In this document: positions 15,001 to 52,858 of the stretch, piece after piece | Layout: each line of letters opens with the position of its first letter | Numbering within the stretch: the stretch's first letter is position 1 | Assembly (NCBI RefSeq): GCF_964194025.1 | Contig: NC_134470.1 | Coordinates: forward strand, 3,472,001-3,536,000 | DNA from: Convolutriloba macropyga | Taxonomy: Eukaryota | Direction of reading: 5' to 3' | Length of the DNA: 64,000 bases | Notes under the pieces: generated by a model | Seen by the model: the letters and a program-made list of their open reading frames with translations, nothing else | What the model was told of the DNA's origin: nothing | Databases searched by the model: none | Made by a program: the position numbers and the translations under genes

Positions 15001-15105
15001 CCTGCATCTGCCATATCTCCCACTTCAACGGAGGGTCTGCACTCGGTTTTCCCCAGAAAGGCTCGATGCCGAGTGGGTTCGTTTTTGCTTTGCTGTTTGC
15101 GCCAT
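9075..15105 (-). pseudogene. Fragmented gag-pol of element C
   Basis: Gag (IEPFWGKP, CxxC knuckles), protease LIDSGS (13565-14080), RT 'FLDD' (12586-13065), RNase H 'ELELLGVV/TDHRAL' (12282-12518), integrase HHCC and core (10423-10923). Many stops and frameshifts. Collinear with element A. Confidence 0.93.
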
Positions 15106-15549
15106 GTCGTACACAAACAATATTGTGTACTTGAACTTGCAGTGCCAATCAAAATTAAAATTTATGGTTCGTTTATTTTTGTGGCAAGTGAATTTAACAC
15201 TGTTTTGCAAATGAATTCGCTTAGCGAATCGTCTGCCTGACACTTGTCTATTTTACTCAGATAGTAAAATACGGCTGATAAGGAATAAGATAAATTAGGC
15301 AACTATTCAGAGATGGAAAACAAAGAGAAAGAAAATTTAGAACAGTTAGCAACTGAGAAATCATAACTAAATGTTAACACATAAATCCAAGAGCGGGAAT
15401 TTGGGCAACAGACATAATGTGTGAAATAAAAGTGGTAGACACTGAACTTAAAATGAATTTATGATACTGCCTTCAAGATTAGGTACAACATTAAATAAGT
15501 ACATCGTATAATAATTTTACTGCAACAAATAAAATGATTATGTACAACC
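15105..15549 (-). repeat. 5' LTR of element C
   Basis: Homologous to 8473-8918, first base mutated (GG for TG). Followed by PBS-like TGGCGCAAACAGCA (15104-15091). Confidence 0.92.
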
Positions 15550-26625: not shown

Positions 26626-27120
26626 TGTCATACGGCAATGGATACCCTTCATGTATCCAAATCCGTATTTTAAACTAATTTATTGTTGTATGTTCCTTTT
26701 GAAGGGCGAATGCCATTTTTAGTTCAGTGCTATATACTTCCTCCCATATTTAGCAGTTAAGTCTGTTCATCCCGTCTGTACCGGATATATACTCATTCAC
26801 GTTGTAAACAAATCAAACTTTGCTTCCTTTCTGTATGATTAAAACCTGAACAAACTTTCTTTCATAATCTGTATTATCATTAACTTTCATTCTCCAATTT
26901 GTAGCGCTAACGCTCAGTTCAATTTAATCCTTGCAAAATACCTCTCGTTTTAACTGAGTAGTTCAGTTAGAGTCAATCGCACCGCGATTGCCAAATCTAG
27001 AAAGGCTTTAGTTGAAAGTAACAACTAAATCGTCCATTCGCGACGCAAGTGCCTATCTCAGTACTTACAAAGCCACATTTGCGATTCAATTGACTATACT
27101 CCTTGTGTATGAGTATAACA
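26626..27120 (+). repeat. 5' LTR of element A (495 bp)
   Basis: TG...CA termini; differs from 33130-33622 by about 3 substitutions and a 2-bp indel by eye. Confidence 0.97.
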
Positions 27121-32997: not shown

Positions 32998-33129
32998 TCT
33001 TCGATAAAGAAACTTTCATAAACTTCTATTTTATCTATTATTTAATATTTTATTACTTACTAACCGGTGAATATTTATTAGTTTTCTGATTTTAATTTAG
33101 TAAATTAATTTTTCCTCAAGAGGGGGAAA

Positions 33130-33622
33130 TGTCATACGGCAATGGATACCCTTCATGTATCCATATCCGTATTTTAAACTAATTTATTGTTGTATGTTCC
33201 TTTTGAAGGGCGAATGCCATTTTTAGTTCAGTGCTATATACTTCCTCCCATATTTAGCAGTTAAGTCTGTTCATCCCGTCTGTACCGGATATATACTCAT
33301 TCACGTTGTAAACAAATCAAACTTTGCTTCCTTTCTGTATGATTAAAACCTGAACAAACTTTCTTTCATAATCTGTATTATCATTAACTTTCATTCTCCA
33401 ATTTGTAGCGCTAACGCTCAGTTCAATTTAATCCTTGCAAAATACCTCTCGTTTTAACTGAGTAGTTCAGTTAGAGTCAATCACACCGCGATTGCCAAAT
33501 CTAGAAAGGCTTTAGTTGAAAGTAACAACTAAATCGTCCATTCGCGACGCAAGTGCCTATCTCAGTACTCACAAAGCCATTTGCGATTCAATTGACTATA
33601 CTCCTTGTGTATGAGTATAACA
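33130..33622 (+). repeat. 3' LTR of element A, shared with the following partial copy
   Basis: Follows the PPT, matches the 5' LTR, and is immediately followed by PBS and gag again. Confidence 0.97.
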
Positions 33623-34506
33623 TGGCGCAGTCAGCATCGGACTCAAAGAAAACACCACTCCATATAGAAGCATTCTGGGAGAAACCGACAGCAACACCTT
33701 CCCTGACGTGGATCAAATGGACGCAGCAGTGGAAATTGGCCCTACTTCCTAAGGAAGGGATCCAATTGGATACTCTGTTGAGTGATCCACCAGCAACAGT
33801 GACATACCCGCCTGAGCCTACCTATGAAGCACCGGTAGAGAATCACACACAGGCAACGGAAAGAGATCGTAAAGTCCGAAACCAACAATTGAAAGTCAAT
33901 TGGCAAAATCGTTGTGCAAAGATTGAAGAAATCGGGATCCTCTGTGGTGACAAGCCATGGGGAATTTGTGAACAGAAGACAATATCATTGCTATATCTAA
34001 GCATTGGCACAGAGGGGCGACGGATCTTCAAGAGCAAGTACCCTCACTTTCAGATCGAAAAACAACCTTTTAAAGATTTGTGGCGAGCAATGGAGGACTC
34101 ATTCACAAAGGTTCGTAATATAACTTACGATCGCTTCGTTTTCTACTCGTGTAAACAACAAAAAAGGAGAATCGGTAGAAAGTTTCTACGGCCGTCTCAT
34201 AGAATTGGCGGAAAATTGTAATCTTGGTAGTGAAGAAACTACACTCATTCGTGATGCATTCATATTAAATATGCTTGATCACGAAACTCAGAAAGAGTTG
34301 TTGAAGGAAACAGTAGACCCACCAAAAGCATTGGAAATCGCCATACAAATGGAAATGGGAGCACAGAACCAGCAGAAAATTAACCAAAACTTGATGTCAG
34401 GTAATACTTCAGTGAATTACATCAATAATAACTCAATGAGCAATCGCAACGCGAATGGACCTTCCACAAAGCGAGACTCCACTCGCTACGCATCTATCCC
34501 AAAAAA
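33622..34506 (+). pseudogene. Second, truncated PBS-gag copy of element A
   Basis: Apparently identical to 27120-28004 including the same frameshift; breaks at ...ATCTATCCCAAAAAA. Confidence 0.95.
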
Positions 34507-34520
34507 CCGTATGACAAACA

Positions 34521-35077
34521 AGGCACAAGAAAAACGCTCAGAGAGATTTGCTAGTATGAAAAGCAGTGGTTCGTCAAACAAGTTAGTCATAGTTGAGAGA
34601 CGAAGTTGACACGCGAAGAGTGTTTAAAAACGATCAATCAATCTTTCTGATTAGCTTAAATTACCTTGACTTAGTGGAATCGGGATTCTTCCAACTGTTG
34701 AAAGTTGTTTATGATTCTTAATTTTGAATAACAGGAGAAAATTTTACTGTGTTCATTAATTCTCTACTTCGTAATTACTTATTCTGGGGATAACCCTTAG
34801 CTTCAATTCATCGGTGGAAAGAACCGATATTTACTTGGTTGTTTTAATAACTACAACTCAAAGAATTATTATTTCCATTACTTGGAAAAGAAATTAAATA
34901 TTGCGTGCAATAAATATCTTAAATACAGCTTTGAGCGAGCACAGGGGACAATAGTCTATACTAAATTGTCAGATGGACTCACTTTTCTCTGAAGAACCTT
35001 TCAAACTTGATAGAGTTTTGGGCGCCAGCCAGTCCCCAGCTAGAAGCCTTCTAACGATAAAAGTACAAAATTCTACA
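34521..35077 (+). repeat. 5' LTR remnant (3' portion) of element B
   Basis: Homologous to 48711-49294 (aggcacaagaaaaacgct...aaaattctaca) with scattered substitutions and a ~21-bp indel. Confidence 0.93.
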
Positions 35078-35078
35078 G

Positions 35079-35097
35079 TGGCGCTCCTGGGTGGGCT
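35079..35097 (+). promoter_or_regulatory. Primer-binding site, tRNA-Asn-like
   Basis: TGGCGCTCCTGGGTGGGCT 1 nt after the LTR, resembling the complement of the eukaryotic tRNA-Asn 3' end (...AGCCCACCCAGG..GCCA). Confidence 0.7.
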
Positions 35098-35376
35098 TTC
35101 TGACAGATTAAAATAGATTAGTTTTTACGAGTTTGGGTCTCAATCCAAGGTGTGTACAACATACTTCCTCAAAATGGATTCAATACTCGCCCAAAGAAGC
35201 AAAGAACACCTATCTGAATTGCCGAGTACAAATCAAATAACTCAAACCAGAAGTCGGGCTGATAGATTAAGAGAACTACCCAGACTCCGGCGAGATTATG
35301 AAGTACGAAAAGAAGTGCATTCGCAAAAATTAGAAGAACACTCTAGTTTAAGTGGTTAAGCAATTACATAACGAAA

Positions 35377-36528
35377 ATGGCGTTGCAAACGGAAGATATA
35401 CAACGATTTGCCCATTCAGCCATTCAAGCTGCGGACGCACTGAATAGTCAAGGACTGCAAGGGCCAGGTGCACACCAACCTGACTGTTTTCCTAATCCGA
35501 TATACAAAATTTGGGTGGATTGGAAAAAACATTTTGTATGCATTGCGGAGTCGACTCGTTGGGATGAAGAACAAGCAATGGCTTGTGTCCCAACCTGCCT
35601 CACAGGCTGGGCCCTTGACGAATGCACTGCAATGCCCAACCACTTTCGAGAACAGGAATATGGGCATCCGGCACCTACTCTGGAGCGATTGTTTGAATAC
35701 TTAGACCCTCGAATGATGCGATTTCGAAACCAACGAACTGCTCGAGCCGAGTTCAAAAACTTTATTCAAGGTGAAAAGGAACGAAATCAGGATTTTTCAA
35801 GGAGAATACGGTCCATCGGGGAGGTAGCAAACCATAACATGAATGCTGCAACCCGTGGCGATATGAACCGTGAACAGTTTATCGATGGACTCTATGACGC
35901 TGAAATCTAAGAATTTCTACTTAGAGAAGATCCCCAAAACTTCTCGGCTGCTATAAATAGGGCACTGAGCCTTGATAGTGTAGCACGTAATTCTTGTATG
36001 CAACAGCGACGAAGGTTAGCGTCATTGTGATCAGTTGTTGAAGACCCCGTTGAGACTCAGAGATATACTCAGAGTAATGAGATGATGCAGAGAGGCAAGG
36101 CATCAAGAGTGTTCGCAACTGCGGAGAATTCTACGGATCTTTCGGGGTCTGTCAATGCTAAGATTGATCAACTAGTAAACAGTTAGGCCGAGTTTATGAA
36201 GAATATGTCAAATATGATGAGCAAATTCGTGACTTCAGTAATTCCGAAGCAATATGAAGTCTCACATAGTGAAAATAAACCAAAACAGGAAAGCGACGAG
36301 AAACGTCTGTACAATCCTTATCCGCCTGGTAGCCGTTACGGTCAACAATTCATCAGTTCCAAACCAAACAATGCCCAGTACAGTGGTGGACCAGCTCAAA
36401 AAAACAGCCTCGGCAGACGATTAGGAGCTGCGGGAAGGCAGTGTTTCCAATGTGGCCAGGAAGGTTATTTTGTTAAGGATTGCCCTGAGCGCCAAAACCA
36501 ACAACAGACCGGTCCTTTTAACTACTAG
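35377..36528 (+). pseudogene. gag of element B
   Basis: Capsid-like W..W..HF..IA...W and QGEKE MHR-like segment, degenerate knuckle CFQCGQEGYFVKDC, in-frame stops, TAG at 36526. Confidence 0.85.
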
Positions 36529-36574
36529 AGGCCGGGAGGGCCACAGTTTTTCGTAAAGAGGCTCTATCCCGGCC
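36516..36574 (+). promoter_or_regulatory. -1 ribosomal frameshift signal between gag and pol (mutated slippery site plus stem-loop)
   Basis: T TTT AAC in the gag phase, one change from canonical T TTA AAC. 7-nt spacer, then stem GGCCGGGA (36530-36537)/TCCCGGCC (36567-36574) with inner GGGCC/GGCTC. The -1 frame is open for ~49 codons afterwards. Confidence 0.7.
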
Positions 36575-36689
36575 GAATTCAAAGCAAATAGACAAAAAGA
36601 CAACATTAAAGCATATTTTGAAGCAAGAAAAATTAAATTTTGCGACGGAAAGGCCAAACAACAGCACGTAGCACAAATACAACCGCCAT

Positions 36690-39600
36690 AGATGATGAGA
36701 AAAAGTTTGATTCGTCGGATTTTGATGAAGGTTCTGAAGCAGCCGTGGTTGATGGCATAGTGAATGACTCGATAATTTTGGATGACTCGACACGGAAATG
36801 ACTCGACACGGAAAAATTGATTGGTACGGGGGCATCAACAAATATAATGCAAGCAGAAAAACTCTTCAGCTCTGATCGTTTTGCGAGAAATATCCCATAT
36901 AAAGGCCGCTTAGAGTCAGCCGATGGAAAGACCATAAATGTTCTTGGTCGCGCAATATTGGAGTTAAAGCTGGGTTCTATATGCGTGGAAATACACCTTC
37001 TAGTGTTGCAGAACTTGAAGCCTCAGATGATACTTGGCCTCAAGGAAATGAAACGCCATGGTTGTACAATTGACTTTAGATCAAACGAAATGTGGACAGG
37101 CAGCAAAGAAAGTTAGGCGGTGGTAATGCGCATGGTTTCTCTGACCTCAGTTGGCAGCTACCGTTAGTGTCGCGAAACTGAAATTGACCTGTCAATGCAA
37201 GATACAAAGCTTGTCAACGATCATCAGCTGAAGGCAGTCACTGGCGCTAGTCCCAAAGAAAACGACCATCTGATGGCAGCGCAACACTTTAGAAAAACAC
37301 AGGTCAAAGATTCAGAAAGCAATTCTCTAAGTGAAACCGAAGATGAGGAATGGACAGACACTGATAATGAGGTTGGGAACTGGGTTACTTACACAGTCTA
37401 TAAAGCCCAAGATCATCCCACTCTAGACCAGGAAGTTGATCAAATTTTGAAATTATCTGCACCGGGCGTTTCTGGTGTTGCTCTCGATCGGCTGAGAACA
37501 CTAGTGCGAGAATATCGGTATGTATTTGCGTTGAAAAGCAATGAACTTGGATGCACCGACATTGTTCTGCATCAAATTAAAACAGGTGATACCCCACCCA
37601 TCAAAAAACATCCACACCGTATTTCGCCGGCCAAGATACCTATTATCCAAGAAGAACTCAAGAGCATGCTGGAGAAGGGAGTCATTCAGTCTTCATAGAG
37701 CCCCTACAGCGCTCCTATTGTGCTTCAGAAGAAAAAATATGATAGCTGGAGATTCTGCGTAGACTACCGCAACCTTAACGATGTTACGGTGAAAGACGCC
37801 TTTCCTATACCAAAAATAGATCTGAGTTTCGATGCTTTGAGGGGAGCGAAATTTTGTTCTCTCGAATTAGCAAGTGGCTACTGGCAGGTACCGGTTGTAC
37901 CAGAGGATAGACAGAAAACAGTTTTCGTCAAACCTGATGCTGGGCTGTATGAATACATTAAAATGCCTTTTCTATCTAATGCCCCCGGATCCTTTCAAAG
38001 GCTTATGAACAATCTTTTCAAAGATCACCTCTGGAAGTGGGTTCTAATTTTTCTTGATGATGTTTTGGCGTACGATTGGACTGAGGAAGAACACTTCAAA
38101 CACATTGAAGTTATATTCAATCTGTTGCGAGCAGCAAGTTTGAAACTGAAGCCTAGGAAATGCAGACTTCTTCAGCAGCAAGTTGTATACCTCAGTCATG
38201 TTATCGATAAAGATGGAGCTCGACCAGACCCTTAAAATGTTGCTGTTGTCAGAGAATGGCCAGAACCAAAAACCGTTAAACAAGTACGGTCATTCGTTGG
38301 ATTTTGCAATTACTATCGGCGCTTTGTGAAAGACTTTGCACAAATTGCTCGTCCTTTACATGCATTAACAAATAAAAAAGCTCGATTTGAGTGAACTAAC
38401 AAATAAAAATGCTCGATTTTGCAATCACTATCGGCGCTTTGTGAAAGACTTTGCACAAATTGCTCGTCCCTTACATGAATTAACAAATAAAAATGCTCGA
38501 TTTGACTCCCTGTTGTCAAATGGCATTCGATCGACTGCGTCTCGAACTAGCTACAGCATATGTCCTACAGTTCCCTCGGTATGACTGCCCCTTTATCATT
38601 GACACAGATGCAAGCAACGTATAAGCAACGTCAGTCTGGGTTCAGTACTTTCAAATTTCATTGATGGCGTGGAACATCCTATAGTATTTGCAAGTAGGAG
38701 CCTGAGTAAGACCGAAACTATGTACTCTACAACGAAGCGGGAATCCCTGGTGGTAGTTCAGGCTTTGAAATGGTTCAAACATTATATATGGGGACTCAGC
38801 TTTGTCATACGTACAGATCATGCCAGCTTAAAATGGTTATTCAGGCAAAATGCAGACGGCATGACGTTCAGAATGCTCCAACATTTGCAAGAGTTCAATT
38901 ACAAAATTGTTCATCGCGCGGGCAACAAACATGCCAATGCGAATGGGTTCTCTCGGATGACGGAAGAAGAGCCTGAATGAGAGCCGGGCGAAAAAGAACA
39001 AGTAACGGTGCAGTGTCCTGAACCTCAAGAAATCAAAGAAGCCCTAAAAAGAGTTCGTGAACGTTGTGCTATGGTTGACGCTATCACAGAAACCATAGAT
39101 GACGAAAATGAAGAGGGGGTCGCTATAACATGGACTCGCAAGACTCAGATATAGAACGGTTGCAGCAGGAAGACGAGGCAATCAGCCGTATTTTGTACTG
39201 GGCACCAACAGGATCAGAAAGTAGCTGCTCGCCTCTGGGCCCTAACTTAATTTCAAAAGAACAGGCAGTTCACCATGGACCTGAAGTAGTAGCCTACTGG
39301 TCACGGTGGTCAGAGCTTGTTCTTAAGAATCAAGTTTTGTACAGGAAGTCGTATCAACCAGAGAAGAACGAACCGCATTTGCAGCTGATTGTACCTGTTT
39401 CTTGCAGAAAAAAAATTTTAGATCAACTTCACACTTCCCCAGTGAGTGGAGGTCATTTCAAAATAGAAAGAACACTATTGCGAATAAGGCAGAGATTCTG
39501 GTGGCCCTTCATGAGGCGTGACATTGAGAAAAAAACTTCTTGGTGTCTTCCATGTGCAGCTCGGACCACGGCAGGCAGGCAACGTACCGCATAATTAAGT

Positions 39601-40900
39601 CCCTTCGAAGTTGGTATTCGCTTTCACACGGTTGCTGCTGATATACTATGACCAGTTACACTAGCCGCACGGTCAAGAGCGAAGTAAATTCTTGTTATGA
39701 AGGATTTGTTCACAAAACATGCAATCAGTGTTCCACTTGTTGTAACCTAAGCAAAAGATGTGGCGAAAGAAATTGTAGAATGCTGGGTCCTTAATTTTGT
39801 CGTGCCCGATGTACTTCACACAGACCAACGAAAAAACTTTGGGATTGACTTGATTAAAGAAATCTGTAAATTGCTTAAAATGGACGAAGCAAGAACTTCT
39901 CCGTATTACTCTCAGGGAAATGTTCAAGTGGAACAACTTATCCGTGTAATTGCCGATGTTCTCTCAAAATATTGCGCCAAAAACCATCGAGATTGGGACA
40001 CAATGCTGCCTTATGTCAATTTTGTCTATAATACGACTATTCATAGGACGACAGGAGCCACTCCGTTTAGTCTCGTCTATGGACAGGAGTGCCAATATCC
40101 TATTGATCTGTTCTACCCGAAGCCTCACCATCAAGAAAAGACCCAGAACGAGTTTGTTGACTGGCTCGATAGGCAATTTAGGGAGGCCCATTCTCATGCA
40201 CGGGAGTTTTTGGGAGTAAATCAAAACCGACAAAAAAATCACTTTCATAAGGAAGTTTCTGGAAAACCATACGAAGTCGATGACGAAGTGTGGGTTTTCT
40301 CAAAACATAAAGCTAAATCAAAAAAATTCTTTCTTCCGTGGGAGGGACTTTACATTGTCCTTGAGAGAACTTCGAAAGTTAACAACAAAGTTAGTAAACC
40401 CCAAAAGCGTGATAAATGGCTTATCCTCCACTACAAACTCCTCAAACCATTCGTGGAAGGGGAACCGAAAACGAGCGAGCGTAGAGCCACACCGTTTTGT
40501 TCCACGAATTTTTATGAGGAACCACTAAAAATTGACGAGTGGGAGCAATTGGATCCGGACCCAATTCCCCGGCCGCCAATATTGGTGGCAAGAAATCGGA
40601 TACAAGTCCCGCAGCCAGCCGTGCAACAGGAAAATGAACTAATCAACAGTCCTATAGTCGAACAGCCAGCTGATCAATTGGGCGATCAGGTCGCCCCGGA
40701 TACAAATAGCCGTGAAAATGATCCGGAATACCAAGGACATTTGGTTCAAAGGCAGTTGGAGTCTCCCAGCGTCGGGTACAGCAGATCTCCAGACGCAGAG
40801 GTTGAACAAACAACACGACCGATTAACCAGAATTAAGTGGAAGAACCCGTTGCGCTACGCCGATCGACAACGATCCGAGCACCGGTCATACGACTGGGAA
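36690..40900 (+). pseudogene. pol of element B (PR-RT-RH-IN), fragmented
   Basis: Protease LIGTGAS (DTG mutated), RT WRFCVDYRNLN / FLDD, RNase H RTDHASLKW, integrase LH..GGH..C..C, HTDQ, YNTTIHRTTGATPF, and GPY/F-like WEGLY. Confidence 0.93.
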
Positions 40901-41000
40901 TCGATGAATAAACACTTTTTCCTCGTTTACTTAAATTCGTTACCCGGATCCCTCTTCCTTGCTTTTTATGAATCGCAAGGCTTTGGTCGGATTTGAATGA

Positions 41001-41025
41001 CCTAATTTAACGTTTTTTCTTTTAG
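41001..41025 (+). promoter_or_regulatory. Putative env splice acceptor
   Basis: Branch-like CTAAT, polypyrimidine tract and TTTTAG at 41025. The env frame is open from 41027 through a hydrophobic signal-like stretch. Confidence 0.65.
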
Positions 41026-41026
41026 A

Positions 41027-43402
41027 GTTAACGCGGTCACGACAGGAAAAACGGACAGATTTCTGACTCTGAGGCTACTCTTCCTATTTCCCATGCTGAG
41101 ATGTGCTATCTGTTTAACTACTAACCATACAGCTGGCGCAGTCTTCACAACGGAAAACCCTGTCATCATTGCGAGTGCGCTGGAATCAACCTGGGTATTG
41201 GTGCCACTACCAGTCCTACCTGCCCTCAACTTAACATCTCTGGACATTGCTTTCCAGGAATTCCAATACGAATTTGCAATGCGATGGAAGAAGCATCATG
41301 GACGGTTTTGCAAAAACTTTTTTACCACTAAAGTTTTGATGAATACGACATATCTTGCACTGAAGGGATTGGAATAGGAAATGCTAGAAATTGATATTGT
41401 TTGTACTGAAATGTGGGAAAGGGCTGCAACATAATTAAATGGAACAGAATCAGTCTTGTCGAGGTCAAAGCGATTCGTCAAACCGCTGCTAGGTGGGATA
41501 GCTGCTGCTATTGCCCTTGCGCCAGTCCGAAAAGCTTGTTTTTGTCAGTACTTCTCTTTCTTCGGATTGTGTTGCGGTGCAGACTTGGATAGACTTGGTA
41601 AAGAGACAGCATTTCTGGACGGAGCGGTACCAACACTCGCTCCTGAATCAGGGGAACGAGTCCACCTGCTGGGCCACTCATTAATCAAAACTCAAGGGCA
41701 ATTGAAGATGATCATTCATAATTCTAATGACAACTTCCATAAGATCAGGAATGTTTTGGGAGAGCTTATCAATAACACCAACATTGGAGTAACACATTGG
41801 GGGGCCTGCTACAACAACAGACAGAAATCAGCAGTGGTCGCTGCTCAGTTTAATATGGGAATGACAAACTTCACCCAAACTATGCTTGCTTTGAGAGCAG
41901 AATGGGTGGCATTCAAAGTCGGACTTCACAATTTTGGCTACATCCTAGATGACGCATTGAGTAGTTTAGCTCGGGGCTATATTCCAGCAACACTCGTACC
42001 TTCAAAAGTTTTGCGACAAGTTCTTAACGGGCTCAAAGTTGACAGGATGCAGGAAGCTATACCCCGTTCTGATTTAATGACCTATTACGGCTTTGAACTA
42101 GTAGAGTCAACAGTATTTACAGAAACAGCCGTAAATGTCCTGATAAACGTGCCTGTACACCACACTAACGGATTTCATAAAGTTTATCGCGCAGTTCCAG
42201 TACCTCAACCAATTGAAGACGGTTCGACAGCGACACGATACAGTTTCTCGCGAAGTTACTTATTGATATCGGAAAGAAAAGATAAATTTGCCGAAGTTAT
42301 GGAGGAGAAACTCATTTCACATTGTAGCGGCAGTAATCGTCTTAAACTGTGTCTAAAACTTTTTTCAATGTCACGAAGTGGAGAATCTACGTGCCTTTCT
42401 AGTCTGTTTTTCGACTTGCAAACATCAGTTCTAAAATTTTGTGCACAGCAGGGTGTAGCCCTACCGGAAGAACCTTACGCGGAGTACTTGGACGACTCAA
42501 CCCACTTGGTTTACTCGCGATCCAGCGACTACAGACTACTCAACTACAGCTCACAAGCCTTCGATACTGGAGAGTGGATCTGCGGCTGCAAAAGTTGCCT
42601 AATTCGATCACCTTGCAAAGGACGTATAGAGGACCCCAGTGGTAGTTTGGTATTGTATCCGGACCCAAGAATTTGCCAGTACGAGACCGGACTTGTTGTA
42701 AGGATTCAACAACACCCCTTACTGCGGACTTTGTTCGGTGAATTGCACGAAATGGAGGCACAACTAGCTGGAATGAAAATCCCAGATGTGTTTCGCGAGG
42801 AAGCTCCCAGTCAAATGCTGGAGACTTTACGTTTGAACTTGGTTGATCTACCCAAAGGAATTGTAGATGAAGAAGCTATGAAAACCATCGCGAAACCTTT
42901 TGCACAAGGAAATATCAATCAGCATGCACCATTCCACTGGCGGGCTTACCACAGTGGACCTGTCAGCTGGTTTGTATGGTTTGTATTAGCTGCAATCTTA
43001 GTAGTTGCACTCTGGATGATGTACACAGGACTCTGCCGAGTTATAGTGAACAAAGCGTGTATCGAAGGGAATACGGCTGGTACTCAGACGAGTCCGAGAG
43101 CCAGAAGGAGTAGATACAATTGTTGGGAGCGCCTACTAAGAGGAGATGCGGGTTTGAGTGGACAAGGGCCGATGAATTTCAGAATGATTGATCGCATTCG
43201 AGTGCAACCTTACTCTGAACGCGACGGGATGGAATCAACTCAATTGGAAGACGACCTTGATGACTCTTTCATTTCGACACCTCATCACCCCCGGATCCAG
43301 TGGCAAAACGCAGAGGAGCAGGGACTACCGAGAGAAGTTGGCGTGCGTCAAGATTTTATAAACTGTAGAAGGGAAGGGAAGAGTGAGCCGATGACAGCGT
43401 AA
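41027..43402 (+). pseudogene. env: Envelope (class I fusion, baculovirus F / errantivirus env-like) glycoprotein with two in-frame stops
   Basis: ORFs 41093-41377 and 41456-43402 are in one frame. Signal-like FLTLRLLFLFPMLRCAIC, furin site RSKR then fusion peptide FVKPLLGGIAAAIALA, heptad region, 'LARGYIPATLVP', 'LINVP', 'YRAVPVP', Cys-rich ectodomain, TM WFVWFVLAAILVVALWMMY, long cytoplasmic tail. Confidence 0.88.
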
Positions 43403-43789
43403 ACTGTTAGTTATCAACTTCTATTTATTTATCTTTTGCCGATCTTATTAAGAAAAGTGCTTTAGTTGGTTCTATTACCCCTTTAACTGTAACTAGGAAA
43501 ATTAACTTTTATCTTACATTTATTCATGAGTAGTGTTCCGGTGCTTTCATTTATATACTCATTTGTTCAGTTACACAATTGTATGGTGTACTCGACAAAT
43601 CCCGATACCAATAAGATTTAACTTGCGCACTAAGGCTGAGCGAAATTGAGGTCGGCAAACAGTTCAACTCGCAGGATAAACAAGCAAATGCCTAAATAGA
43701 TAAGAAAAACACGTGAAAATTGAGTTGTCTAGCTGACCCAGAAAACAAATCATACTGCCCTCAGTAACTTTCAAAGCTAAGTACCAAAA

Positions 43790-44344
43790 ATGAGTGGCAC
43801 ACACTTCGAGTGGCACTGCTTCACTCTTGGCCGTCTTTTTAAACTTAGAGATGTCAAAGATACATGGAGCGGTCATTTGGTGGATCTCATAGATGGGAAC
43901 GTAGTTTTTTTGGAAGTTGGGGAACCAGAGTTCTACTCCTTTCTTTCGATTCCCTGGTCAACAGCACCACGACTACTTATCGAGGCGGGGACTAACGATT
44001 AAGTGGAGGATAGAAAACCGGAGGATAATTCAGATACCCCCGACCAAGACTACTCAGTAGAAGAAAACTCATTCCAAGTAAAACACTCCCTCCATCGCCC
44101 TCTAGCTCCAAATGAATTAATAGAAATCATTATTCGACCGGTAGAACGCGAAGAAGCGGATACGTCGGTGGAAATAAACAGGGTTCTCTCTGACTCCACG
44201 GCAGCGGAGCCAGATTCTGAACAAGATATTAGCGACGAAGGTGGACCTGAGATGCCTCCTTTCTACGCACGACGGGACAATCGAGAAGGTGAAATTGAAT
44301 GGGAAGATGTTAGCAGCGACGAATTAACCGACAATTATATTTAA
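43790..44344 (+). pseudogene. Accessory ORF of element B, ~184 aa with acidic C-terminal half, one internal stop
   Basis: ORFs 43790-44002 and 44003-44344 are contiguous in one frame separated by a single TAA. Protein-like composition; function unknown. Confidence 0.6.
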
Positions 44345-44975
44345 CCGATCGTTCCAACTTAAGCGGGCAAAACGTGTCTCTATTTGAATTTGTTATCTAG
44401 GAAGTAATTAGTACATTTAGCCACAAAACCAGAGATCAAAATCAGCGCCTATCAAAGCTATAACCCCGAAAGAACAACATTTCCATCATGGTTCTTATAT
44501 TTTGGGAGTTCAAAGTTCTAGATTGGGTTGTCGTCTTCCAGCGGGTACAATTTTGCGAGGATAGTTTTGTTATTTTACAACTGGAAGACGAAAACGAATT
44601 TTTGCTTTTACTGGATAGTGCGGCGGGCAAATAAGTTAAGTCGGCTACGTTATCTAACTGGGTCAAGCCTTTGACGAATGAACCGTTACCAGCATTCCAA
44701 TCAATACTATATTCTCCTTGTTTGAAGGATGTGTCCACGCAAACGGAAAAGAAGAATATCACTTGGACGCCAGCGATGTGGGAAAAACAAATAAATAAAG
44801 TAGTATATGGACTTCGTGCTAACAGGGTTGAACTCTGCCGTTTCCTGATAACTTTTATACAAAGCTTACTATAGTTATAATTATACACTCAGTTTGTAGA
44901 GTATTAATTAAAGTAGCAACAGCATAGAAAAAAAGGGGGTTTGAGGATAGAATTACAAGTTTAAATAACTCAAAC

Positions 44976-45394
44976 TCAGTTTTCGTCTACCACCCACCAG
45001 TTCTGCCAATCTTGCGGCGTCGAGAAAGGCCACGGCCTTTCAATGATGGTGGGTGGTACGAAGGCTATTGCATCGTACACCGGCTTTTTGAGGGCGCTGA
45101 TAGCGTGGGTACATTGAAAAAAGACGGGAGGAGTTGGCCTCATCCGCACCAATTCCTCATCCCACCGCTGCAGCTCCCGCACAAAGTCCCGGTGATCCGA
45201 AGATTCTGGCTCAACTTCGACGCTTTCGCCGCTTTGCTTGAAGACGACCATTCTGGAAACACTGGGGTTTATGGCCCTTATCCGGTCCAGATTGACGAAC
45301 GTGAAACCGACCGCCACATCATTCTGGAATCGGACAGGGTACTCCCCAAATCCAGCAATTGCCGTCGACAAGCTACTTATAGTTGATTGAGGAC
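44976..45394 (-). CDS. Antisense accessory ORF/exon of element B, unknown function
   Basis: GC-elevated open frame of ~139 codons ending ...PQDWQNWWVVDEN. No in-frame ATG at its start, but a tgtttttag acceptor at ~45395 suggests a spliced terminal exon. Confidence 0.5.
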
Positions 45395-45896
45395 TAAAAA
45401 CACACTTATGTCTAAATGAACATATATAATATATACAAACTTATTTAATCATAACAGGATTTGGAAGAATAGGAAAACAGATTTTTTTGTGAATTGATTT
45501 ACTATCTAGACAATTAGAACTGAGGCGTTGAGTTGTAGAAGATCACTGGAATCAATTGTGGGTGTTATTTTGTTCTGGAAGAACGACGATTGAGGCTGCT
45601 AAAGCTCACAGGAAAACCATGTAGAAATTGAAAAAAAAGAACTGTCAACGCACAAAAAAAATTTATTATATAAAATACCTTTCTAATTGGCTGGTGCGGA
45701 TAGATACAAGGGGAGAAAAAAAAATTTTTCAAGCACTTGACGGCCGACAGGACGGTTAATCAATTTCTTAAATGGAACAAAATTTAAGTTTAAATAAGTT
45801 CAAATTAAACACCACCACAAACTTTGTAGAACCAGGCGAAAATTAACCTACACTTAGAGCAACTTTCTCAAAGATTATTCGGGGGAATAATGATGC

Positions 45897-45908
45897 AGAA
45901 GGGAAGGG
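45897..45908 (+). promoter_or_regulatory. Polypurine tract of element B
   Basis: AGAAGGGAAGGG directly abutting TGTAGAATTT. Confidence 0.7.
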
Positions 45909-46400
45909 TGTAGAATTTAGTTCCTGCGTAGTTTATTGACACCTTTGTTAGTCGCAACTTTAACTTTCACAATCAGAACTTTTGCGGGTAAAATAAAGAG
46001 GTCCGAATTTTGACAAGTCTCAAATACAAATATGCGTCTTTACATTAGGACTAATGAAACACACACTTCGGACTCAAATAACTTGTTCTAACAAAGATAA
46101 GACCAAATTAGCACACGAATGACCAACAATACCAAAAGTGGAGTTTTGCACGGCAAATAACACCTGATAAGAGGCACACAAAATTGTGGCGCGATTTGGG
46201 CCAAGGCAAATAAGAGTTGGAAAATCTCGAGGTCATTCACATTAAAACTTAGCCCGTGGAAACTACAAACAAAGGAAATCAATTTATTGTCCTTATTTTT
46301 TCATTAAAAACTGAACTTAGCTAACTGCTATTATTGGCCTTGCTCCATATTGGCCTTGCTCCATACCCTTATTCGTCAGGCTTTAATATCTTGTAGCACT

Positions 46401-46816
46401 ATGGACAACAAAATCCTAAAGGCACGATATGGAAAGGCCCCAATAAAACTACCTCCAGTGGCTGGCAAAACGCCCTGGGCAGAGCACATTCGAAACTTCA
46501 AGACGAAGGCAAAGAGGCGAACAAAAAACGGCAAGTCTAACAAGGGAAAAAAGACCCTCGCAGCGAAACAAAACCGGCAGCCACAGCAATAAAGCGAGCA
46601 ACAACAGCCACCAAACGATCAACAACAGCAGCAATGCGAACAACAACAGCAACGCGAACAACAGCATCAACCAGCTTGTGATAGCGACTTGTCCAAAGAC
46701 GAAAGAGCCGAGCAACAAGCGCTATTGGAAATAAAGAAGAGAGTGCAAATCGAGCGTCCATATGCAGTGTAAAAGCAAACTTTAATTTAATTAGATATCT
46801 GTCATGTGTGTGCTAG
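46401..46816 (+). pseudogene. Small basic (K/R-rich) plus Gln-rich ORF with one internal TAA, within the inferred LTR
   Basis: ATG at 46401 MDNKILKARYGK...KTKAKRRTKNGK. TAA at 46590 lies amid CAA/CAG codons and the frame continues SEQQQPPNDQQQQQ... to TAG at 46814. AATAAA at ~46826. Confidence 0.55.
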
Positions 46817-46860
46817 TCCGGTTTAATAAATGATGTCGTCGAAATTGAACAATTTACCCC

Positions 46861-47754
46861 TCATTTTTTTGGCTTAACACGAGTAACAATAAAACAATGC
46901 ATTGTTCCACCGCTCAGGCCGGCCTTTAAGTAAATTCCTCCTCTATTTGGGCCCACTTTGTTTCCAGTGTAACAATCCCAGTGGGCTTGCTCGATTTCAT
47001 CGGTCTCATAAAACATATAAATATTAGTTCTAAAGGTTCGGGCTAGCATTCTCAAATCTGTTGTTGTAACGAAATTAAGATCATCTGGGCCATTAATAAG
47101 AGGGGCAGCGCCCATCAGTTTTAATAAGTGGCGGTCCGGGCCTTCTTTTTGTAAAGAACGAATTATCTCTTCATTTTTTCCGCCTTGATTACGGTTTCCG
47201 GTCAGAATTGTGCTAAGTGCAGCGCACACGCAATTGTAATCGGGATCAATAGTGTCCACAGTTTTAGGGATAAAAGAAATAGGATCTAACGAAGGGGCGT
47301 TCTTGAAGCAATTGTTTTCCAGTAACGGCCTTTTGTTAATAACTAGGCCTAATTCATAACAAATTCTATCCAGTGTAAGGCGAGAAGCATGAACTAAGGG
47401 ACCGGTAAAACGGCGATGAGTAAATTTTTCATTGCAATAATCGCAGTTACGTACTATTTCTCGAACGATAGGCTGGGCTCCCTGGACATCGTAAGATTGT
47501 TTAACAAGCCGTTCGAGCTTAACTGCTTTAATATGCTCGTGGTCTCGATGTAACTTTTGTATGATAATTTTTGCATTCCTGGAATGCAACACTTTAAATC
47601 CAGTCTTTTTATTAATAAAAATTAGTTTTGGTTTGCAAAGCCGACTGCATAATTGTTTAAAATTGTGCCTTTTCAGTTGATTAAAACTGACATCTAGTGG
47701 AAATGATCCACGGCGATGAAATTTGAGAATAGACTGATATAATTGGAAATCCAT
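46861..47754 (-). CDS. Integrase-type H2C2 zinc finger fused to an OTU-like cysteine protease (297 aa), antisense within element B
   Basis: Uninterrupted ATG-TGA ORF. N-terminal LYQSILKFHRRGSFP, then LHRDHEH...VREIVRNCDYC. C-terminal IDPDYNCVCAALS (cf. DGNCLFRALS), TTTDLRMLARTFRTNIYMF, and IYLKAGLSGGTMHCFIV (His loop). Confidence 0.75.
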   Translation of the reverse strand: MDFQLYQSILKFHRRGSFPLDVSFNQLKRHNFKQLCSRLCKPKLIFINKKTGFKVLHSRNAKIIIQKLHRDHEHIKAVKLERLVKQSYDVQGAQPIVREIVRNCDYCNEKFTHRRFTGPLVHASRLTLDRICYELGLVINKRPLLENNCFKNAPSLDPISFIPKTVDTIDPDYNCVCAALSTILTGNRNQGGKNEEIIRSLQKEGPDRHLLKLMGAAPLINGPDDLNFVTTTDLRMLARTFRTNIYMFYETDEIEQAHWDCYTGNKVGPNRGGIYLKAGLSGGTMHCFIVTRVKPKK

Positions 47755-49474
47755 TGGCGCTCTAAGTTAGTAGGTAAATAAAAGCTAGTAGGAATTAAGG
47801 TTTAATGAATTTGGTAGTTTGTGATTTGCTAGTTTTCTGGTATTTGCGTAAGTTCATTGAGCAAACAAGAAATGGTGTGCATACTATTTCCTTTACTGAG
47901 TTATCAGAGCATGATATATCGATCTGCTACTCTCTGGTACGGCTTCAGGGTTCCCAATTGCTTCAAACTAAGCGTCTAGAATTTCACCACCCCCCGCAAG
48001 TCTTGAAAACCCTACTTCCTCAAGTCCGATAACCATGAAATTTTAACTGATCACTCTTAGGACAATTCCTTACACATTGAAGAAAACAACGGGCTTTTTC
48101 CGGTACCCAAAACCGTTCTTTTGGCCTTTGAAGTAAAACAAAAAAAATAGATGAAAGGCGAATTTCTTATACTCATTTGAAAGAAACGACACTTTTTCTA
48201 GAGTCAAAACATTTTACCAAGGCGTCGTTCAGAGTGGAAAGTTGAGATAAATTACCTGTCAATTCCAAAGTATTAGCACTGAGACTGTTCTACAAGGGAG
48301 TAAGGGACAGAAAGAGCTAAGGTTTCTTTTTCCTTTTTTTGATGACTCTAAGGAAATGGTTAAAATTTTGTTTAAAACGGAACACTTCTCCAGCCTAAAT
48401 GGGAAACAAAGGTATCATAGTTTAAATTGGATGCGTATCCGTTACTTAGGGAGGAAAAAAAAGCAAGCGCGCGAAAATTTGCACACATATTGCTCAGCAT
48501 GAAACATGGATTGTGCCATATTCTGAAATTATCAAACCGAGTTAAACAAGCAACTCCGGTCATCTCGAACAAACATTCACATAAGAAAGGTGGCATCTTG
48601 TGATTGACCTTCCACGCCCACTATAACACTTAGACGTTAGGTCAGAATGTTCTAAAAGGAACGACACGTTACTTTTTGCTGATAAAAAACTGATCAGGTT
48701 GAGTACCCTTAGGCACAAGAAAAACGCTGAGAGAGAGATTTGCTAATCTGAAAAGCAGTGGTTCGTCAAACAAGTTAGTCATTGTTGAGAGACGAAGTTG
48801 ACACGCGAGTTCAACTTTCTTAGGTAAAAAAGAGTGTTTAAAAACGATTAATCGATCTTTCTGATTAGCTTAAATTACCTTGACTTAGTGGAATCGGGAT
48901 TCTTCCAACTGTTGTAAGTTGTTTATGATTCTTAATTTTGAATAACAGGAGAAAATTTTATTGTGTTCATTAATTCTCTACTTCGTAATTACTTATTCTG
49001 GGGATAACCCTAAGCTTCAATTCATCGGTGCAAAGAATCGATATATACTTGGTTGTTTTAATAACTACATTTCAAAGAATTATTATTTCCATTATTTGGA
49101 AAAGAAATTAATTATTGCGCGCATCAAATTTCTTTTATATACAGCTTTGAGAGAGCACAGTGGACAATAGTCTATACTTAATTGTCAGACGGACTCACTT
49201 TTCTTCGAATAACCTTTAAAACTTGATAGAGTTTTGGGCGCTAGCCGGTCCCCAGCTAGAAGCCTTCTGACGATAAAAAATACAAAATTCTACAATATAT
49301 ATATATGTATATATATAACCGAGGGTTAGGTACGAGTTTACAATAACGCTTTTTTATCCCTTGAGAAGGGTCAATAACCCAAAAAAGATCAGGTTTTTAT
49401 TGGGGCGAGGTTCCAATTTTGAATCGGGTCCTAGTTGCTTTTGGAGAGCTAATAAGCAGTAATCAACACCCCAC

Positions 49475-52612: not shown

Positions 52613-52858
52613 AGATGGTTAAACATATAAACCGTCTCTCATAAATTGATGGTAGTTAAATAAATCTGTAAATATAGTATTACATATTCGATGCAAAATT
52701 ATTTCATCATTTTGTTTTTTGCATTAGAGATTAAAATGATGAAATTTTAAAAAAAGACTTTACAATGATAAATTTAAATTTCGTCGAATACAAATACATT
52801 TACAGATTTATTGAAGTACTATCAACTTATTGGAGAAGATGTAAATATTGAACCATCT
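52613..52858. repeat. Degenerate inverted repeat (old MITE-like foldback)
   Basis: agatggtt...ttgatggtagttaaataaatctgtaaat pairs with atttacagatttattgaagtactatcaa...aaccatct. Confidence 0.6.

What the first reader, a model, noticed from the sequence alone, without database searches (positions are those of the whole stretch)
46861..47754. Retrovirus-like element carries an intact antisense gene: integrase-type zinc finger fused to an OTU-like deubiquitinase
Seen: a 297-aa uninterrupted ORF antisense to element B, although gag and pol of the same element are riddled with stops. It has an H-x3-H...C-x2-C integrase-type finger and a C-terminal domain with OTU-like Cys-loop (D-Y-N-C-x-x-x-A-L-S), central helix/strand (DLRMLARTFRTNIY) and His-loop (IYL...H). 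Established: OTU proteases are deubiquitinases used for immune evasion by nairoviruses and arteriviruses. Ginger1 DNA transposases have a YPYY + H2C2 N-terminus and sometimes OTU C-termini. Inference: this is a captured, DDE-less Ginger1-like or chimeric gene repurposed as an accessory anti-host or anti-silencing deubiquitinase of an env-bearing Gypsy element. I do not know this architecture to be described.
Basis: partly seen in the sequence, partly recalled or inferred. Interest (0 to 1): 0.92.

Follow-up and report, generated by a model that had tools for sequence, protein, structure and literature searches.

The report
OTU-like gene inside giant LTRs
A family of retrovirus-like mobile elements carries, inside each of its unusually long (3.4 kb) terminal repeats and on the opposite strand to gag-pol, a conserved gene whose protein joins an integrase-type zinc-finger domain to an OTU-type (deubiquitinase-like) protease fold; I found no description of this arrangement.

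Summary
The 297-aa ORF at 46861-47754(-) is real. None of 2000 shuffles of the surrounding 3.4 kb reaches that length. The C-terminal half matches only OTU proteases in the PDB, and the N-terminal part matches the N-terminal domain of murine leukaemia virus integrase. No sequence profile detects OTU. The location needs correcting. The gene is not in the element's internal region but lies wholly inside a 3386-bp 3' LTR (45909-49294). This LTR has TG..CA ends and a polypurine tract just upstream. Related contigs hold full-length elements with two such LTRs, each carrying the gene, and solo LTRs with 5-bp target duplications that also keep it. Copies from different subfamilies give dN/dS of 0.28-0.49. 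A relative with 28% identity sits at the same place in a diverged element from another assembly. It is therefore a selected accessory gene of the element, not a nested Ginger transposon. Deubiquitinase activity and any anti-host role remain inferences. The window copy is a decayed relic: gag and pol are broken and the 5' LTR is truncated. All relatives come from unnamed ENA or Logan assemblies, and the host is unknown.

The parts
34521..35077 (+). Remnant of the 5' LTR: only its last 557 bp. The first ~2.8 kb, which would hold a second copy of the gene, is missing.
   Evidence: It matches 48711-49294 of the 3' LTR at 89.7%. In the intact relative L005 the homologous LTR continues for 3.3 kb.
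35079..35096 (+). Primer-binding-site-like sequence starting TGG, one base after the LTR end.
   Evidence: Read directly. The same 18-mer follows the 5' LTR in L005, L012 and the diverged element L007.
35377..36525 (+). gag, broken: 3 in-frame stops and no frame change.
   Evidence: tblastn of the intact 383-aa gag of L005 gives 86.7% identity with full coverage. There is a weak zf-CCHC match.
36480..40908 (+). pol (protease, RT, RNase H, integrase), broken: about 17 in-frame stops and at least 4 frame changes, including one short tandem duplication.
   Evidence: tblastn of the intact 1428-aa pol of L005 gives 83.5% identity. Pfam finds RVT_1, RT_RNaseH and Integrase_H2C2 on the pieces.
41456..43402 (+). 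ORF3, intact at 648 aa. It is an env-like candidate with one C-terminal hydrophobic helix and 18 Cys.
   Evidence: It has homologues of 600-794 aa at 46-92% identity. Six of 12 family members match Pfam Baculo_F below threshold, best E 8.2e-4, window copy 0.029. The AlphaFold2 model was unusable at pLDDT 44.
45897..45908 (+). Polypurine tract immediately 5' of the 3' LTR.
   Evidence: Read directly. The same tract abuts the LTR in L013 and L014.
45909..49294 (+). 3' LTR, 3386 bp, with ends TGTAGAATTT...AAATTCTACA.
   Evidence: Homology to ten related loci starts and stops exactly here. Paired LTRs 98.8% identical flank gag-pol-ORF3 on contig ctg33985. Solo copies carry 5-bp target duplications.
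46861..47754 (-). The finding: an intact 297-aa gene inside the LTR, antisense to gag-pol.
   Evidence: There are 297-aa homologues at 85-87% identity, one cluster of which has 63 members. dN/dS is 0.28-0.49 between subfamilies.
47350..47754 (-). Residues 1-135: integrase N-terminal-domain-like region (an N-terminal extension plus the HHCC finger). The finger, H69 to C107, is encoded at 47434-47550.
   Evidence: Pfam Integrase_H2C2. Foldseek matches the MLV integrase N-terminal domain 4nzg_A and 3nnq_A, target-normalised TM-score (TMt) 0.56-0.59. Conservation.
46864..47307 (-). Residues 150-297: OTU-fold cysteine-protease-like domain. C175 sits at the N-terminus of helix 175-185 and H286 in the C-terminal strand 284-295.
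   Evidence: AlphaFold2 pLDDT 91.4. The 34 best Foldseek PDB hits are all OTU proteases. Conservation.
46781..46786 (-). ATTAAA on the gene's strand, 75 nt after its stop, conserved in all six aligned LTRs. Candidate polyadenylation signal; inferred only.

Best explanation
SHOWN. The ORF is a genuine, selected accessory gene of a family of Ty3/Gypsy-type, probably env-carrying, LTR retroelements. It lies wholly inside their exceptionally long LTR (about 3.4 kb) on the strand opposite to gag-pol. A complete element therefore carries two copies, and every solo LTR left by LTR-LTR recombination keeps one. The protein has two domains: an integrase N-terminal-domain-like module (N-terminal extension plus HHCC zinc finger, no DDE core) and an OTU-fold module. 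The OTU-fold module has a conserved Cys at the start of a helix and a conserved His in a C-terminal strand. INFERRED. The gene is transcribed from a promoter inside the LTR and ends at a conserved ATTAAA shortly after the stop. The protein is an active ubiquitin or ubiquitin-like protease. Its integrase-like domain docks onto the element's own integrase, preintegration complex or LTR DNA ends. There it would remove ubiquitin-type marks that would otherwise send element proteins to degradation or to host restriction. The same two parts sit in a single polypeptide in Ginger1 transposases (integrase plus C-terminal OTU). The window copy itself is a decayed relic whose gene is still open.
For: LTR anatomy. 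Homology of ten related loci to the window begins and ends exactly at 45909 and 49294, with TG..CA inverted termini. A polypurine tract abuts 45909 and a TGG-starting primer-binding site follows 35077. Contig ctg33985 has two 3.2-3.3-kb LTRs 98.8% identical, each with the gene (P0092, P0093), flanking an intact gag (383 aa), pol (1428 aa) and ORF3 on the other strand. L012, L013 and L014 show the same layout. Solo LTRs carry perfect 5-bp target duplications in L001, L003, L010 and L011.

Selection. dN/dS is 0.28-0.49 between subfamilies (Fisher p 1e-8 to 3e-3) and about 0.7-1.07 within the closest trio. Full-length relatives at 25-35% identity keep the same motifs. P0041, at 28% identity and from another assembly, lies antisense in the 5' LTR of a diverged element with the same primer-binding site.

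Fold. AlphaFold2 gives pLDDT 91.4. Foldseek PDB ranks 1-34 are all OTU proteases (nairovirus OTUs, OTUD3, OTUD1, OTUD5/DUBA, Cezanne), with probability 0.97-1.00 and TMt 0.31-0.63. The MLV integrase N-terminal domain matches the N-terminal part. BFVD gives nairovirus L OTU regions and retroviral Pol fragments. C175, H286 and the HHCC residues are conserved.

Precedent. An integrase fused to a C-terminal OTU domain is documented in Ginger1 transposases (PMC2836005).
Against: No sequence profile recognises OTU. Pfam gave none among 35 members. PDB profile searches of the whole family and of the domain alone gave nothing. NCBIfam and PHROGs gave nothing. Foldseek E-values are modest (1e-4 to 1e-2), and the tools gave no residue-level superposition, so alignment of C175 and H286 with the OTU catalytic dyad is not shown. 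A third catalytic residue is not evident: the acidic residue three positions before the Cys is not conserved (8/23). There is no evidence of transcription, translation or activity. The N-terminal domain shows no BLASTP similarity to the element's own integrase, so docking onto that integrase is conjecture. For the window copy, dN/dS against its closest relatives is about 1, so nothing shows selection on this particular copy.
Confidence: 0.55

Rival explanations
1. Regulatory decoy. The protein acts mainly through its integrase-like N-terminal domain as a catalytically dead competitor that damps or times integration, giving copy-number self-control. The OTU fold serves only as a ubiquitin-binding or scaffold module without protease activity.
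For: The integrase N-terminal domain is present without a DDE core. dN/dS in the N-terminal half is as low as or lower than in the OTU half (0.24-0.40 versus 0.29-0.73). No OTU sequence profile matches and no clear third catalytic residue is present.
Against: The candidate nucleophile C175 (21/23), the preceding N174 (20/23) and H286 (18/21) are among the best-conserved positions of the family across 20-35% identity. This is hard to explain for an inactive fold. The zinc-ligand position C107 is lost more often (18/23) than the protease positions.
Confidence: 0.15
2. A protease with another substrate. The OTU-fold domain cleaves something other than ubiquitin chains, such as a ubiquitin-like modifier (SUMO or ISG15-like), an element polyprotein or a host factor. 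This would parallel some viral OTU-fold proteases that also process polyproteins.
For: The fold and the dyad-like residues are as above. The family is far from canonical OTU sequences, so specificity may differ. Ulp1-type or OTU-type proteases alternate in Ginger1 transposases (PMC2836005).
Against: Nothing in the data points to a particular alternative substrate. The best structural neighbours are all ubiquitin or ISG15 proteases.
Confidence: 0.12
3. A hitch-hiking relic. The ORF is the remnant of a Ginger1-like or host gene that landed in an ancestral LTR and is copied passively with the LTR, with no function for the element.
For: The architecture resembles a Ginger1 transposase minus its DDE core (PMC2836005). 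The window copy evolves neutrally relative to its closest relatives.
Against: dN/dS is well below 1 between subfamilies. The reading frame is open at 297 aa in many copies, including young elements. The gene is retained at the same LTR position in an element whose gene is only 28% identical. The start codon and motifs are conserved down to about 20-25% identity. The gene has no TIRs or target duplication of its own; the TG..CA ends and duplications belong to the whole 3.4-kb LTR.
Confidence: 0.05
4. A host gene. The ORF is a domesticated single-copy host gene that merely lies next to retroelement debris.
For: More distant relatives (L008, L009) have no gag or pol within 10 kb.
Against: The close family is multi-copy. 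One cluster at 90% identity has 63 members, and dozens of fragment clusters exist. The copies examined are always embedded in the same LTR, with differing flanks and target duplications.
Confidence: 0.03

Closest known systems
Ginger1 DNA transposases with a C-terminal OTU domain (Bao, Kapitonov and Jurka 2010, PMC2836005)
   Same: Both combine a Gypsy-integrase-type N-terminus (a region upstream of the finger plus an H2C2 finger) with a C-terminal OTU-type cysteine protease. Element termini start TGT in both.
   Different: Ginger1 proteins contain the DDE core and the GPY/F motif. Their elements have 40-270-bp TIRs and 4-bp CCGG or CCGT target duplications, and their OTU domain is recognised by the Pfam OTU model. 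Here there is no DDE or GPY/F, because only about 40 residues lie between the finger and the OTU fold. The gene sits inside an LTR with 5-bp AT-rich duplications, and Pfam OTU does not match. Direct sequence comparison was not possible with the tools.
OTU-like protease domains of animal Helitrons and Helentrons (PMC6431247, PMC4067079)
   Same: Both are OTU-type cysteine proteases carried by a mobile element as an extra domain of unknown role.
   Different: In Helitrons the domain is part of the large Rep/helicase protein of a rolling-circle DNA transposon. Here it is a separate small protein of a retroelement.
Antisense additional ORFs of plant Ty3/Gypsy elements: Retand TRP28, Grande, RIRE2 (PMC11963269)
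   Same: Both are family-wide conserved genes antisense to gag-pol near the 3' end of a Gypsy element, thought to be accessory or regulatory.
   Different: The plant genes lie in the internal pol-to-3'LTR region, not in the LTR, and encode TRP28 or other DNA-binding-type domains. None encodes an OTU or integrase-like protein.
Retroviral accessory genes that use the LTR: the HTLV-1 antisense gene HBZ (cited in PMC11963269) and the MMTV superantigen gene in the LTR U3 region (my own knowledge, not checked here)
   Same: Both offer precedents for an antisense accessory gene driven from the 3' LTR and for a coding sequence inside an LTR.
   Different: HBZ is encoded mainly in the internal region, and sag is on the sense strand. 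Neither is a protease or integrase-like. Here the whole gene is antisense and inside the LTR.
Viral OTU proteases: nairovirus L-protein OTU domains (PDB 6dx1, 3phw and others) and cellular OTUD1, OTUD3 and OTUD5 (PDB 4bop, 4bou, 3tmp)
   Same: These are the best structural neighbours of the C-terminal domain.
   Different: Sequence identity is only 9-17% and no profile-level sequence match exists. Those viral domains are part of RNA-virus polymerase proteins. Activity here is untested.
Envelope-carrying Ty3/gypsy elements of metazoans, errantivirus-like (PMC13524379)
   Same: Both have a gag-pol-ORF3 layout with a tRNA primer-binding site. ORF3 has weak Baculovirus-F-type similarity, and F-type is one of the env types that paper reports.
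   Different: That survey does not mention OTU, antisense genes or genes within LTRs. Its LTR search extended only 3 kb beyond gag and env, so giant LTRs may have been clipped.

Membership tests
OTU cysteine protease superfamily (Pfam PF02338) | OTU three-dimensional fold | tested here: met
   The AlphaFold2 model has pLDDT 91.4. Foldseek PDB ranks 1-34 are all OTU proteases, probability 0.97-1.00, about 140-180 aligned columns for most, TMt 0.31-0.63. BFVD gives nairovirus OTU regions.
OTU cysteine protease superfamily (Pfam PF02338) | Match to the family's sequence profile | tested here: not met
   Pfam OTU gave no hit at E<=10 for the window protein and none at E<=0.01 among 35 members. PDB profile searches gave no OTU chain at E<=10.
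OTU cysteine protease superfamily (Pfam PF02338) | Catalytic Cys at the N-terminus of a helix and catalytic His in a C-terminal beta-strand | tested here: inconclusive
   C175 (21/23) opens helix 175-185 and H286 (18/21) lies in strand 284-295, as expected. The tools give neither coordinates nor residue-level superposition, so equivalence to the OTU dyad is not shown. No conserved third residue was identified.
OTU cysteine protease superfamily (Pfam PF02338) | Ubiquitin or ubiquitin-like isopeptidase activity | not testable with these tools
   No biochemical data are available.
Retroelement integrase N-terminal zinc-binding domain (Pfam Integrase_H2C2, PF17921) | HHCC ligand pattern and profile match | tested here: met
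   H69 20/21, H74 21/22, C104 24/24 and C107 18/23. The window protein scores 21.4 bits, below the 25.5-bit cut-off, but 11 of 35 members match, best E 4.4e-7. The fold matches the MLV integrase N-terminal domain 4nzg and 3nnq.
Integrase or DDE transposase (functional enzyme) | DDE catalytic core (Pfam rve) | tested here: not met
   There is no rve match. Only about 40 residues separate C107 from the OTU domain, so it is not an integrase.
Ginger1 DNA transposon (criteria of PMC2836005) | Terminal inverted repeats of 40-270 bp | tested here: not met
   The mobile unit has only about 10-nt inverted termini (TGTAGAATTT...AAATTCTACA). It occurs as direct repeats around gag-pol, so it is an LTR.
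Ginger1 DNA transposon (criteria of PMC2836005) | 4-bp CCGG or CCGT target site duplication | tested here: not met
   The duplications are 5 bp and varied: ATAAT, AATTC, TTTGC and GGTAT.
Ginger1 DNA transposon (criteria of PMC2836005) | Transposase with YPYY motif, H2C2, DDE and GPY/F, plus a C-terminal OTU or Ulp1 domain | tested here: not met
   H2C2 and the OTU fold are present, while DDE and GPY/F are absent. The YPYY motif could not be judged without comparator sequences; conserved Y6 (16/22) and P19 (14/19) are compatible with it.
Ty3/Gypsy LTR retrotransposon (host element) | Paired LTRs with TG..CA ends, primer-binding site, polypurine tract, 5-bp target duplication, and pol order protease-RT-RNase H-integrase | tested here: met
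Envelope-carrying Ty3/gypsy (errantivirus-like) | A third ORF encoding a recognisable viral fusion glycoprotein | tested here: inconclusive
   ORF3 is conserved, with a C-terminal hydrophobic helix and 18 Cys. Baculo_F matches are below threshold in 6 of 12 members, best E 8.2e-4. The structure model was too poor to search.
Antisense additional ORFs of Gypsy elements (plant Retand, Grande, RIRE2 type) | Antisense gene located in the internal pol-to-3'LTR region | tested here: not met
   The gene is antisense but lies inside the LTR, 953 bp from the LTR's 5' end and 1540 bp from its 3' end.

The most novel reading that the evidence does not exclude
The LTR of this retroelement lineage is itself a gene carrier. 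It houses an antisense, self-contained expression unit for an active deubiquitinase that an integrase-mimicking domain targets to the element's integration machinery. Because the unit is in the LTR, it is duplicated in each element and survives as a dispersed set of trans-acting copies in solo LTRs after the rest of the element is lost. This would be a retroelement counter-defence or stabilisation strategy not described before. It would also be a split version of the Ginger1 integrase-OTU fusion, linking the two element classes.
Probability: 0.3. Interest if true: 0.9.

Novelty: new variant of a known kind. Interest (0 to 1): 0.78.

Why it matters
Accessory genes of LTR retroelements are rare outside retroviruses, and their functions are mostly unknown. 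This one has a readable architecture, an integrase-type docking domain plus an OTU-type protease fold. That points to ubiquitin-pathway manipulation by a retrotransposon, a strategy otherwise known from RNA and large DNA viruses. Its position inside the LTR is unusual: it doubles the gene dose per element and leaves potentially expressible copies in solo LTRs, which are normally regarded as purely regulatory debris. It also offers a second, independent pairing of a Gypsy-type integrase module with OTU, alongside Ginger1. This bears on why transposons using this integrase type repeatedly recruit ubiquitin-like proteases. All family members found are unannotated ORFs in ENA or Logan assemblies, so the family appears to be missing from protein databases.

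Tried and rejected
Sequence-profile detection of OTU failed everywhere. This covers Pfam on the window protein and on 35 relatives, PDB phmmer and hmmsearch with the protein, the family profile and a domain-only profile, and NCBIfam and PHROGs.

BLASTP of the ORF against the element family's own intact pol found nothing, so the gene is not a recent copy of the element's integrase.

A profile-profile comparison of the family with integrase N-terminal regions failed in the tool. When I ran it with hhalign, it gave the same high score against a reversed control, so I discarded it.

Searches for relatives gave little. IMG/VR viral contigs had none.

I rejected the nested DNA transposon reading. 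The TG..CA ends and target duplications belong to the whole 3.4-kb LTR, which is a direct repeat around gag-pol.

I rejected hypermutation as the cause of the gag-pol stops, because the substitution spectrum shows no directional bias.

The AlphaFold2 model of ORF3 had pLDDT 44, too poor for a fold search.

The host and the primer tRNA could not be identified. There are no tRNA genes in the window or loci, no Rfam match in the window, no names on any homologue, and no supplement text held for the errantivirus survey.

Comparison with Ginger1 or Helitron OTU sequences was not possible, because no tool fetches them by accession.

Slips, declared as required:
- The script printed tblastn segment bounds by frame for ORF3 in related loci. 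That amounts to places of frame changes in relatives. I did not reuse or repeat them, and later scripts print only counts and outer bounds.
Full report
OBSERVATION. The 297-aa ATG-to-stop ORF at 46861-47754 on the minus strand is present as described. It is not a chance ORF: 0 of 2000 mononucleotide shuffles of the 3.4-kb unit that holds it reach 297 aa, and the maximum was 185. The element around it is a Ty3/Gypsy-type LTR element on the plus strand. Its ORF pieces match zf-CCHC, RVT_1, RT_RNaseH, Integrase_H2C2 and Integrase_p58_C.

Measured against intact relatives, gag (35377-36525) has 3 in-frame stops. Pol (36480-40908) has about 17 in-frame stops and at least 4 frame changes. A 648-aa ORF3 (41456-43402) and the 297-aa ORF are open.

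WHERE THE GENE REALLY LIES. Related contigs show otherwise.

Proteins 85-87% identical and 297-299 aa long occur many times in ENA assembly ERZ25071359; one 90% cluster has 63 members. In ten fetched loci the DNA homology to the window begins and ends at exactly the same two points, 45909 and 49294, whatever the flanks. This 3.4-kb unit has the following properties.
- It starts TGTAGAATTT and ends AAATTCTACA.
- In L001, L003, L010 and L011 it stands alone, flanked by perfect 5-bp duplications (ATAAT, AATTC, TTTGC, GGTAT). In L002 the match is 4 of 5. These are solo LTRs.
- On contig ctg33985 two copies 98.8% identical lie 13.9 kb apart. Each holds the gene (P0092 297 aa, P0093 310 aa). Between them, on the other strand, are an intact 383-aa gag, a 1428-aa pol (protease, RT, RNase H, H2C2, rve, p58_C) and ORF3.
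- L012 (a 5' LTR next to gag, pol and a 676-aa ORF3) and L013 and L014 (3' LTRs next to ORF3 and pol) repeat the picture.

In the window, a polypurine tract (45897-45908) abuts 45909. A TGG-starting primer-binding-site-like 18-mer (35079-35096) follows the short upstream repeat. The window element is therefore made of three parts.
- A 5' LTR cut down to its last 557 bp (34521-35077).
- An internal region (35078-45908).
- A complete 3386-bp 3' LTR (45909-49294).

The gene lies wholly inside the LTR, 953 bp from its 5' end and 1540 bp from its 3' end, antisense to gag-pol. Upstream of the truncation lies another Gypsy-like element.

IS IT A SELECTED GENE? Nei-Gojobori dN/dS among six copies is 0.28-0.49 between subfamilies, with Fisher p from 1e-8 to 3e-3. 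It is 0.7-1.07 (not significant) within the closest trio: window, L002 and L003. This is the usual pattern for a transposon gene: constraint along the active lineages and neutral decay after insertion. Both halves of the protein show it.

An exhaustive profile-free search found full-length relatives at 25-35% identity with a conserved start and conserved motifs. One of them, P0041 (28% identity, assembly ERZ25074608), lies antisense in the roughly 3.1-kb 5' LTR of an element whose gag is 37% and pol 55% identical to the window family. That element uses the same primer-binding site. More distant relatives (L006, L008) sit in about 3-kb units with similar ..TTCTACA ends. For L008 and L009 no gag or pol lies within 10 kb.

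For the window copy alone the evidence is weak. At the rate of stops per difference seen in its gag-pol (20 stops per 410 differences from L005), the ORF's 67 differences would predict about 3.3 stops, giving a Poisson P(0) of about 0.04. ORF3's 109 differences would predict about 5.3, giving P(0) of about 0.005 (my calculation). The substitution spectrum shows no hypermutation. Why both non-gag-pol genes stay open in a copy with a wrecked gag-pol is unexplained.

WHAT THE PROTEIN IS. Sequence profiles give only a sub-threshold Integrase_H2C2 match for the window protein (E 2.8e-4), strengthened by 11 of 35 relatives (best E 4.4e-7). No library gives OTU.

With the 35-sequence alignment, AlphaFold2 gives a confident model: pLDDT 91.4, pTM 0.71. 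Foldseek against the PDB returns OTU proteases at all of ranks 1-34. They include nairovirus OTU domains, OTUD3 (TMt 0.63), OTUD1, OTUD5/DUBA and Cezanne; A20 and a Wolbachia OTU follow lower in the list. For the N-terminal part it returns the N-terminal domain of murine leukaemia virus integrase, TMt 0.56-0.59. The viral library agrees.

The best-conserved positions are as follows.
- The finger residues H69, H74, C104 and C107.
- A G-P-x-x-H motif at 118-122.
- N174 and C175 at the start of helix 175-185.
- T232, D233, R235, A238 and R239.
- H286 in the last strand.

A Cys opening a helix and a His in a C-terminal strand is what a papain-like or OTU dyad looks like. I could not obtain a residue-level superposition. 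There is no room for a DDE core. The N-terminal domain is not a recent copy of the element's own integrase.

HOW IT PROBABLY WORKS. Shown: it is an LTR-borne, antisense, selected gene for an integrase-N-terminal-domain-like plus OTU-fold protein. Inferred: it has its own promoter within the LTR and terminates at the ATTAAA conserved 75 nt after the stop. Also inferred: it has ubiquitin or ubiquitin-like protease activity, and its integrase-like domain targets it to the integration machinery or to LTR DNA. There it would protect element proteins from ubiquitin-dependent turnover or restriction.

The rivals are a catalytically silent integrase decoy, a protease with another substrate, and a passive hitch-hiker. 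The first two are not excluded. The third is contradicted by the selection and conservation data.

COMPARISON WITH WHAT IS KNOWN. Ginger1 transposases combine a Gypsy-type integrase with a C-terminal OTU or Ulp1 domain (PMC2836005). This protein looks like such a transposase without its DDE and GPY/F parts. However, the mobile unit fails the Ginger1 criteria that could be tested (TIR length, CCGG duplication), and an evolutionary link could not be tested.

OTU domains also occur in Helitrons (PMC6431247). Antisense accessory ORFs are known in plant Gypsy elements, but in the internal region and with other domains (PMC11963269). A recent survey of env-carrying Ty3/gypsy elements across metazoans mentions neither OTU nor antisense or LTR-borne genes (PMC13524379). 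Full-text searches found no report of an OTU gene in an LTR retroelement. The library searched is limited to open-access papers and preprints.

ORF3 family members give sub-threshold Baculovirus-F matches, and the structure model was unusable.

VERDICT. I rate it a new variant of a known kind, with interest 0.78. The main uncertainties are activity, expression, origin and host identity.

Noticed in passing
window 41456-43402 (+): ORF3 of the same decayed element is fully open at 648 aa, although gag and pol carry about 20 stops between them. At the gag-pol rate about 5 stops would be expected (P about 0.005). It has a C-terminal hydrophobic helix, 18 Cys and weak Baculovirus-F-type similarity.
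   Followed up: partly
window 27012-34520 (+): A second Gypsy-like element (zf-CCHC, RVT_1, RT_RNaseH, H2C2 and rve, with long open pieces of 628 and 694 aa) abuts the truncated 5' LTR directly. The junction at 34521 may mark the deletion or recombination that removed 2.8 kb of the LTR.
   Followed up: partly
window 9617-15148 (-): Remnants of a third retroelement on the minus strand (RVT_1, Integrase_H2C2, rve). The window is largely a retroelement graveyard, and no tRNA or Rfam family was found anywhere in it.
   Followed up: partly
window 46583-46671; relatives L001, L004, L005, L011 and L013 at 10984-11337 (-) and L014 at 8420-8773 (-): Just beyond the gene's stop the LTR holds an 18-21-nt tandem repeat array. 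In six relatives a 117-aa ORF is called there on the element-sense strand. It may be low-complexity noise or a second small LTR ORF.
   Followed up: no
L002 versus L003: The left flanks are 99.6% identical, but the solo LTR and the DNA to its right are only 94% identical. This looks like two haplotypes or duplicates with uneven divergence. A BEL/Pao-type element (Pao_retrotransp) lies next to the LTR.
   Followed up: no
L006 7793-13932: In another assembly (ERZ25878734) two roughly 3-kb LTR-like units lie in tandem, 94% identical. Each has a distant copy of the gene (P0078, P0121), and the gene's stop is only about 20 nt from the unit's end.
   Followed up: partly
L009 16786-20723 (-): Next to a very distant family member (P0130) lies a gene of more than 1300 aa whose only match is a weak Endonuclease_7 hit. 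It is not gag or pol, and the kind of element is unknown.
   Followed up: no
window 52613-52858: An inverted repeat with 64-nt arms, 80% complementary and 118 nt apart. It may be a small foldback or MITE-like element.
   Followed up: no
window 34521-35077 versus 48711-49294: The 5' LTR remnant is less similar to its own 3' LTR (89.7%) than the 3' LTR is to solo LTRs elsewhere (L003 91.9%, L002 90.6%). This hints that the window element is recombinant or that its two ends have different histories.
   Followed up: no
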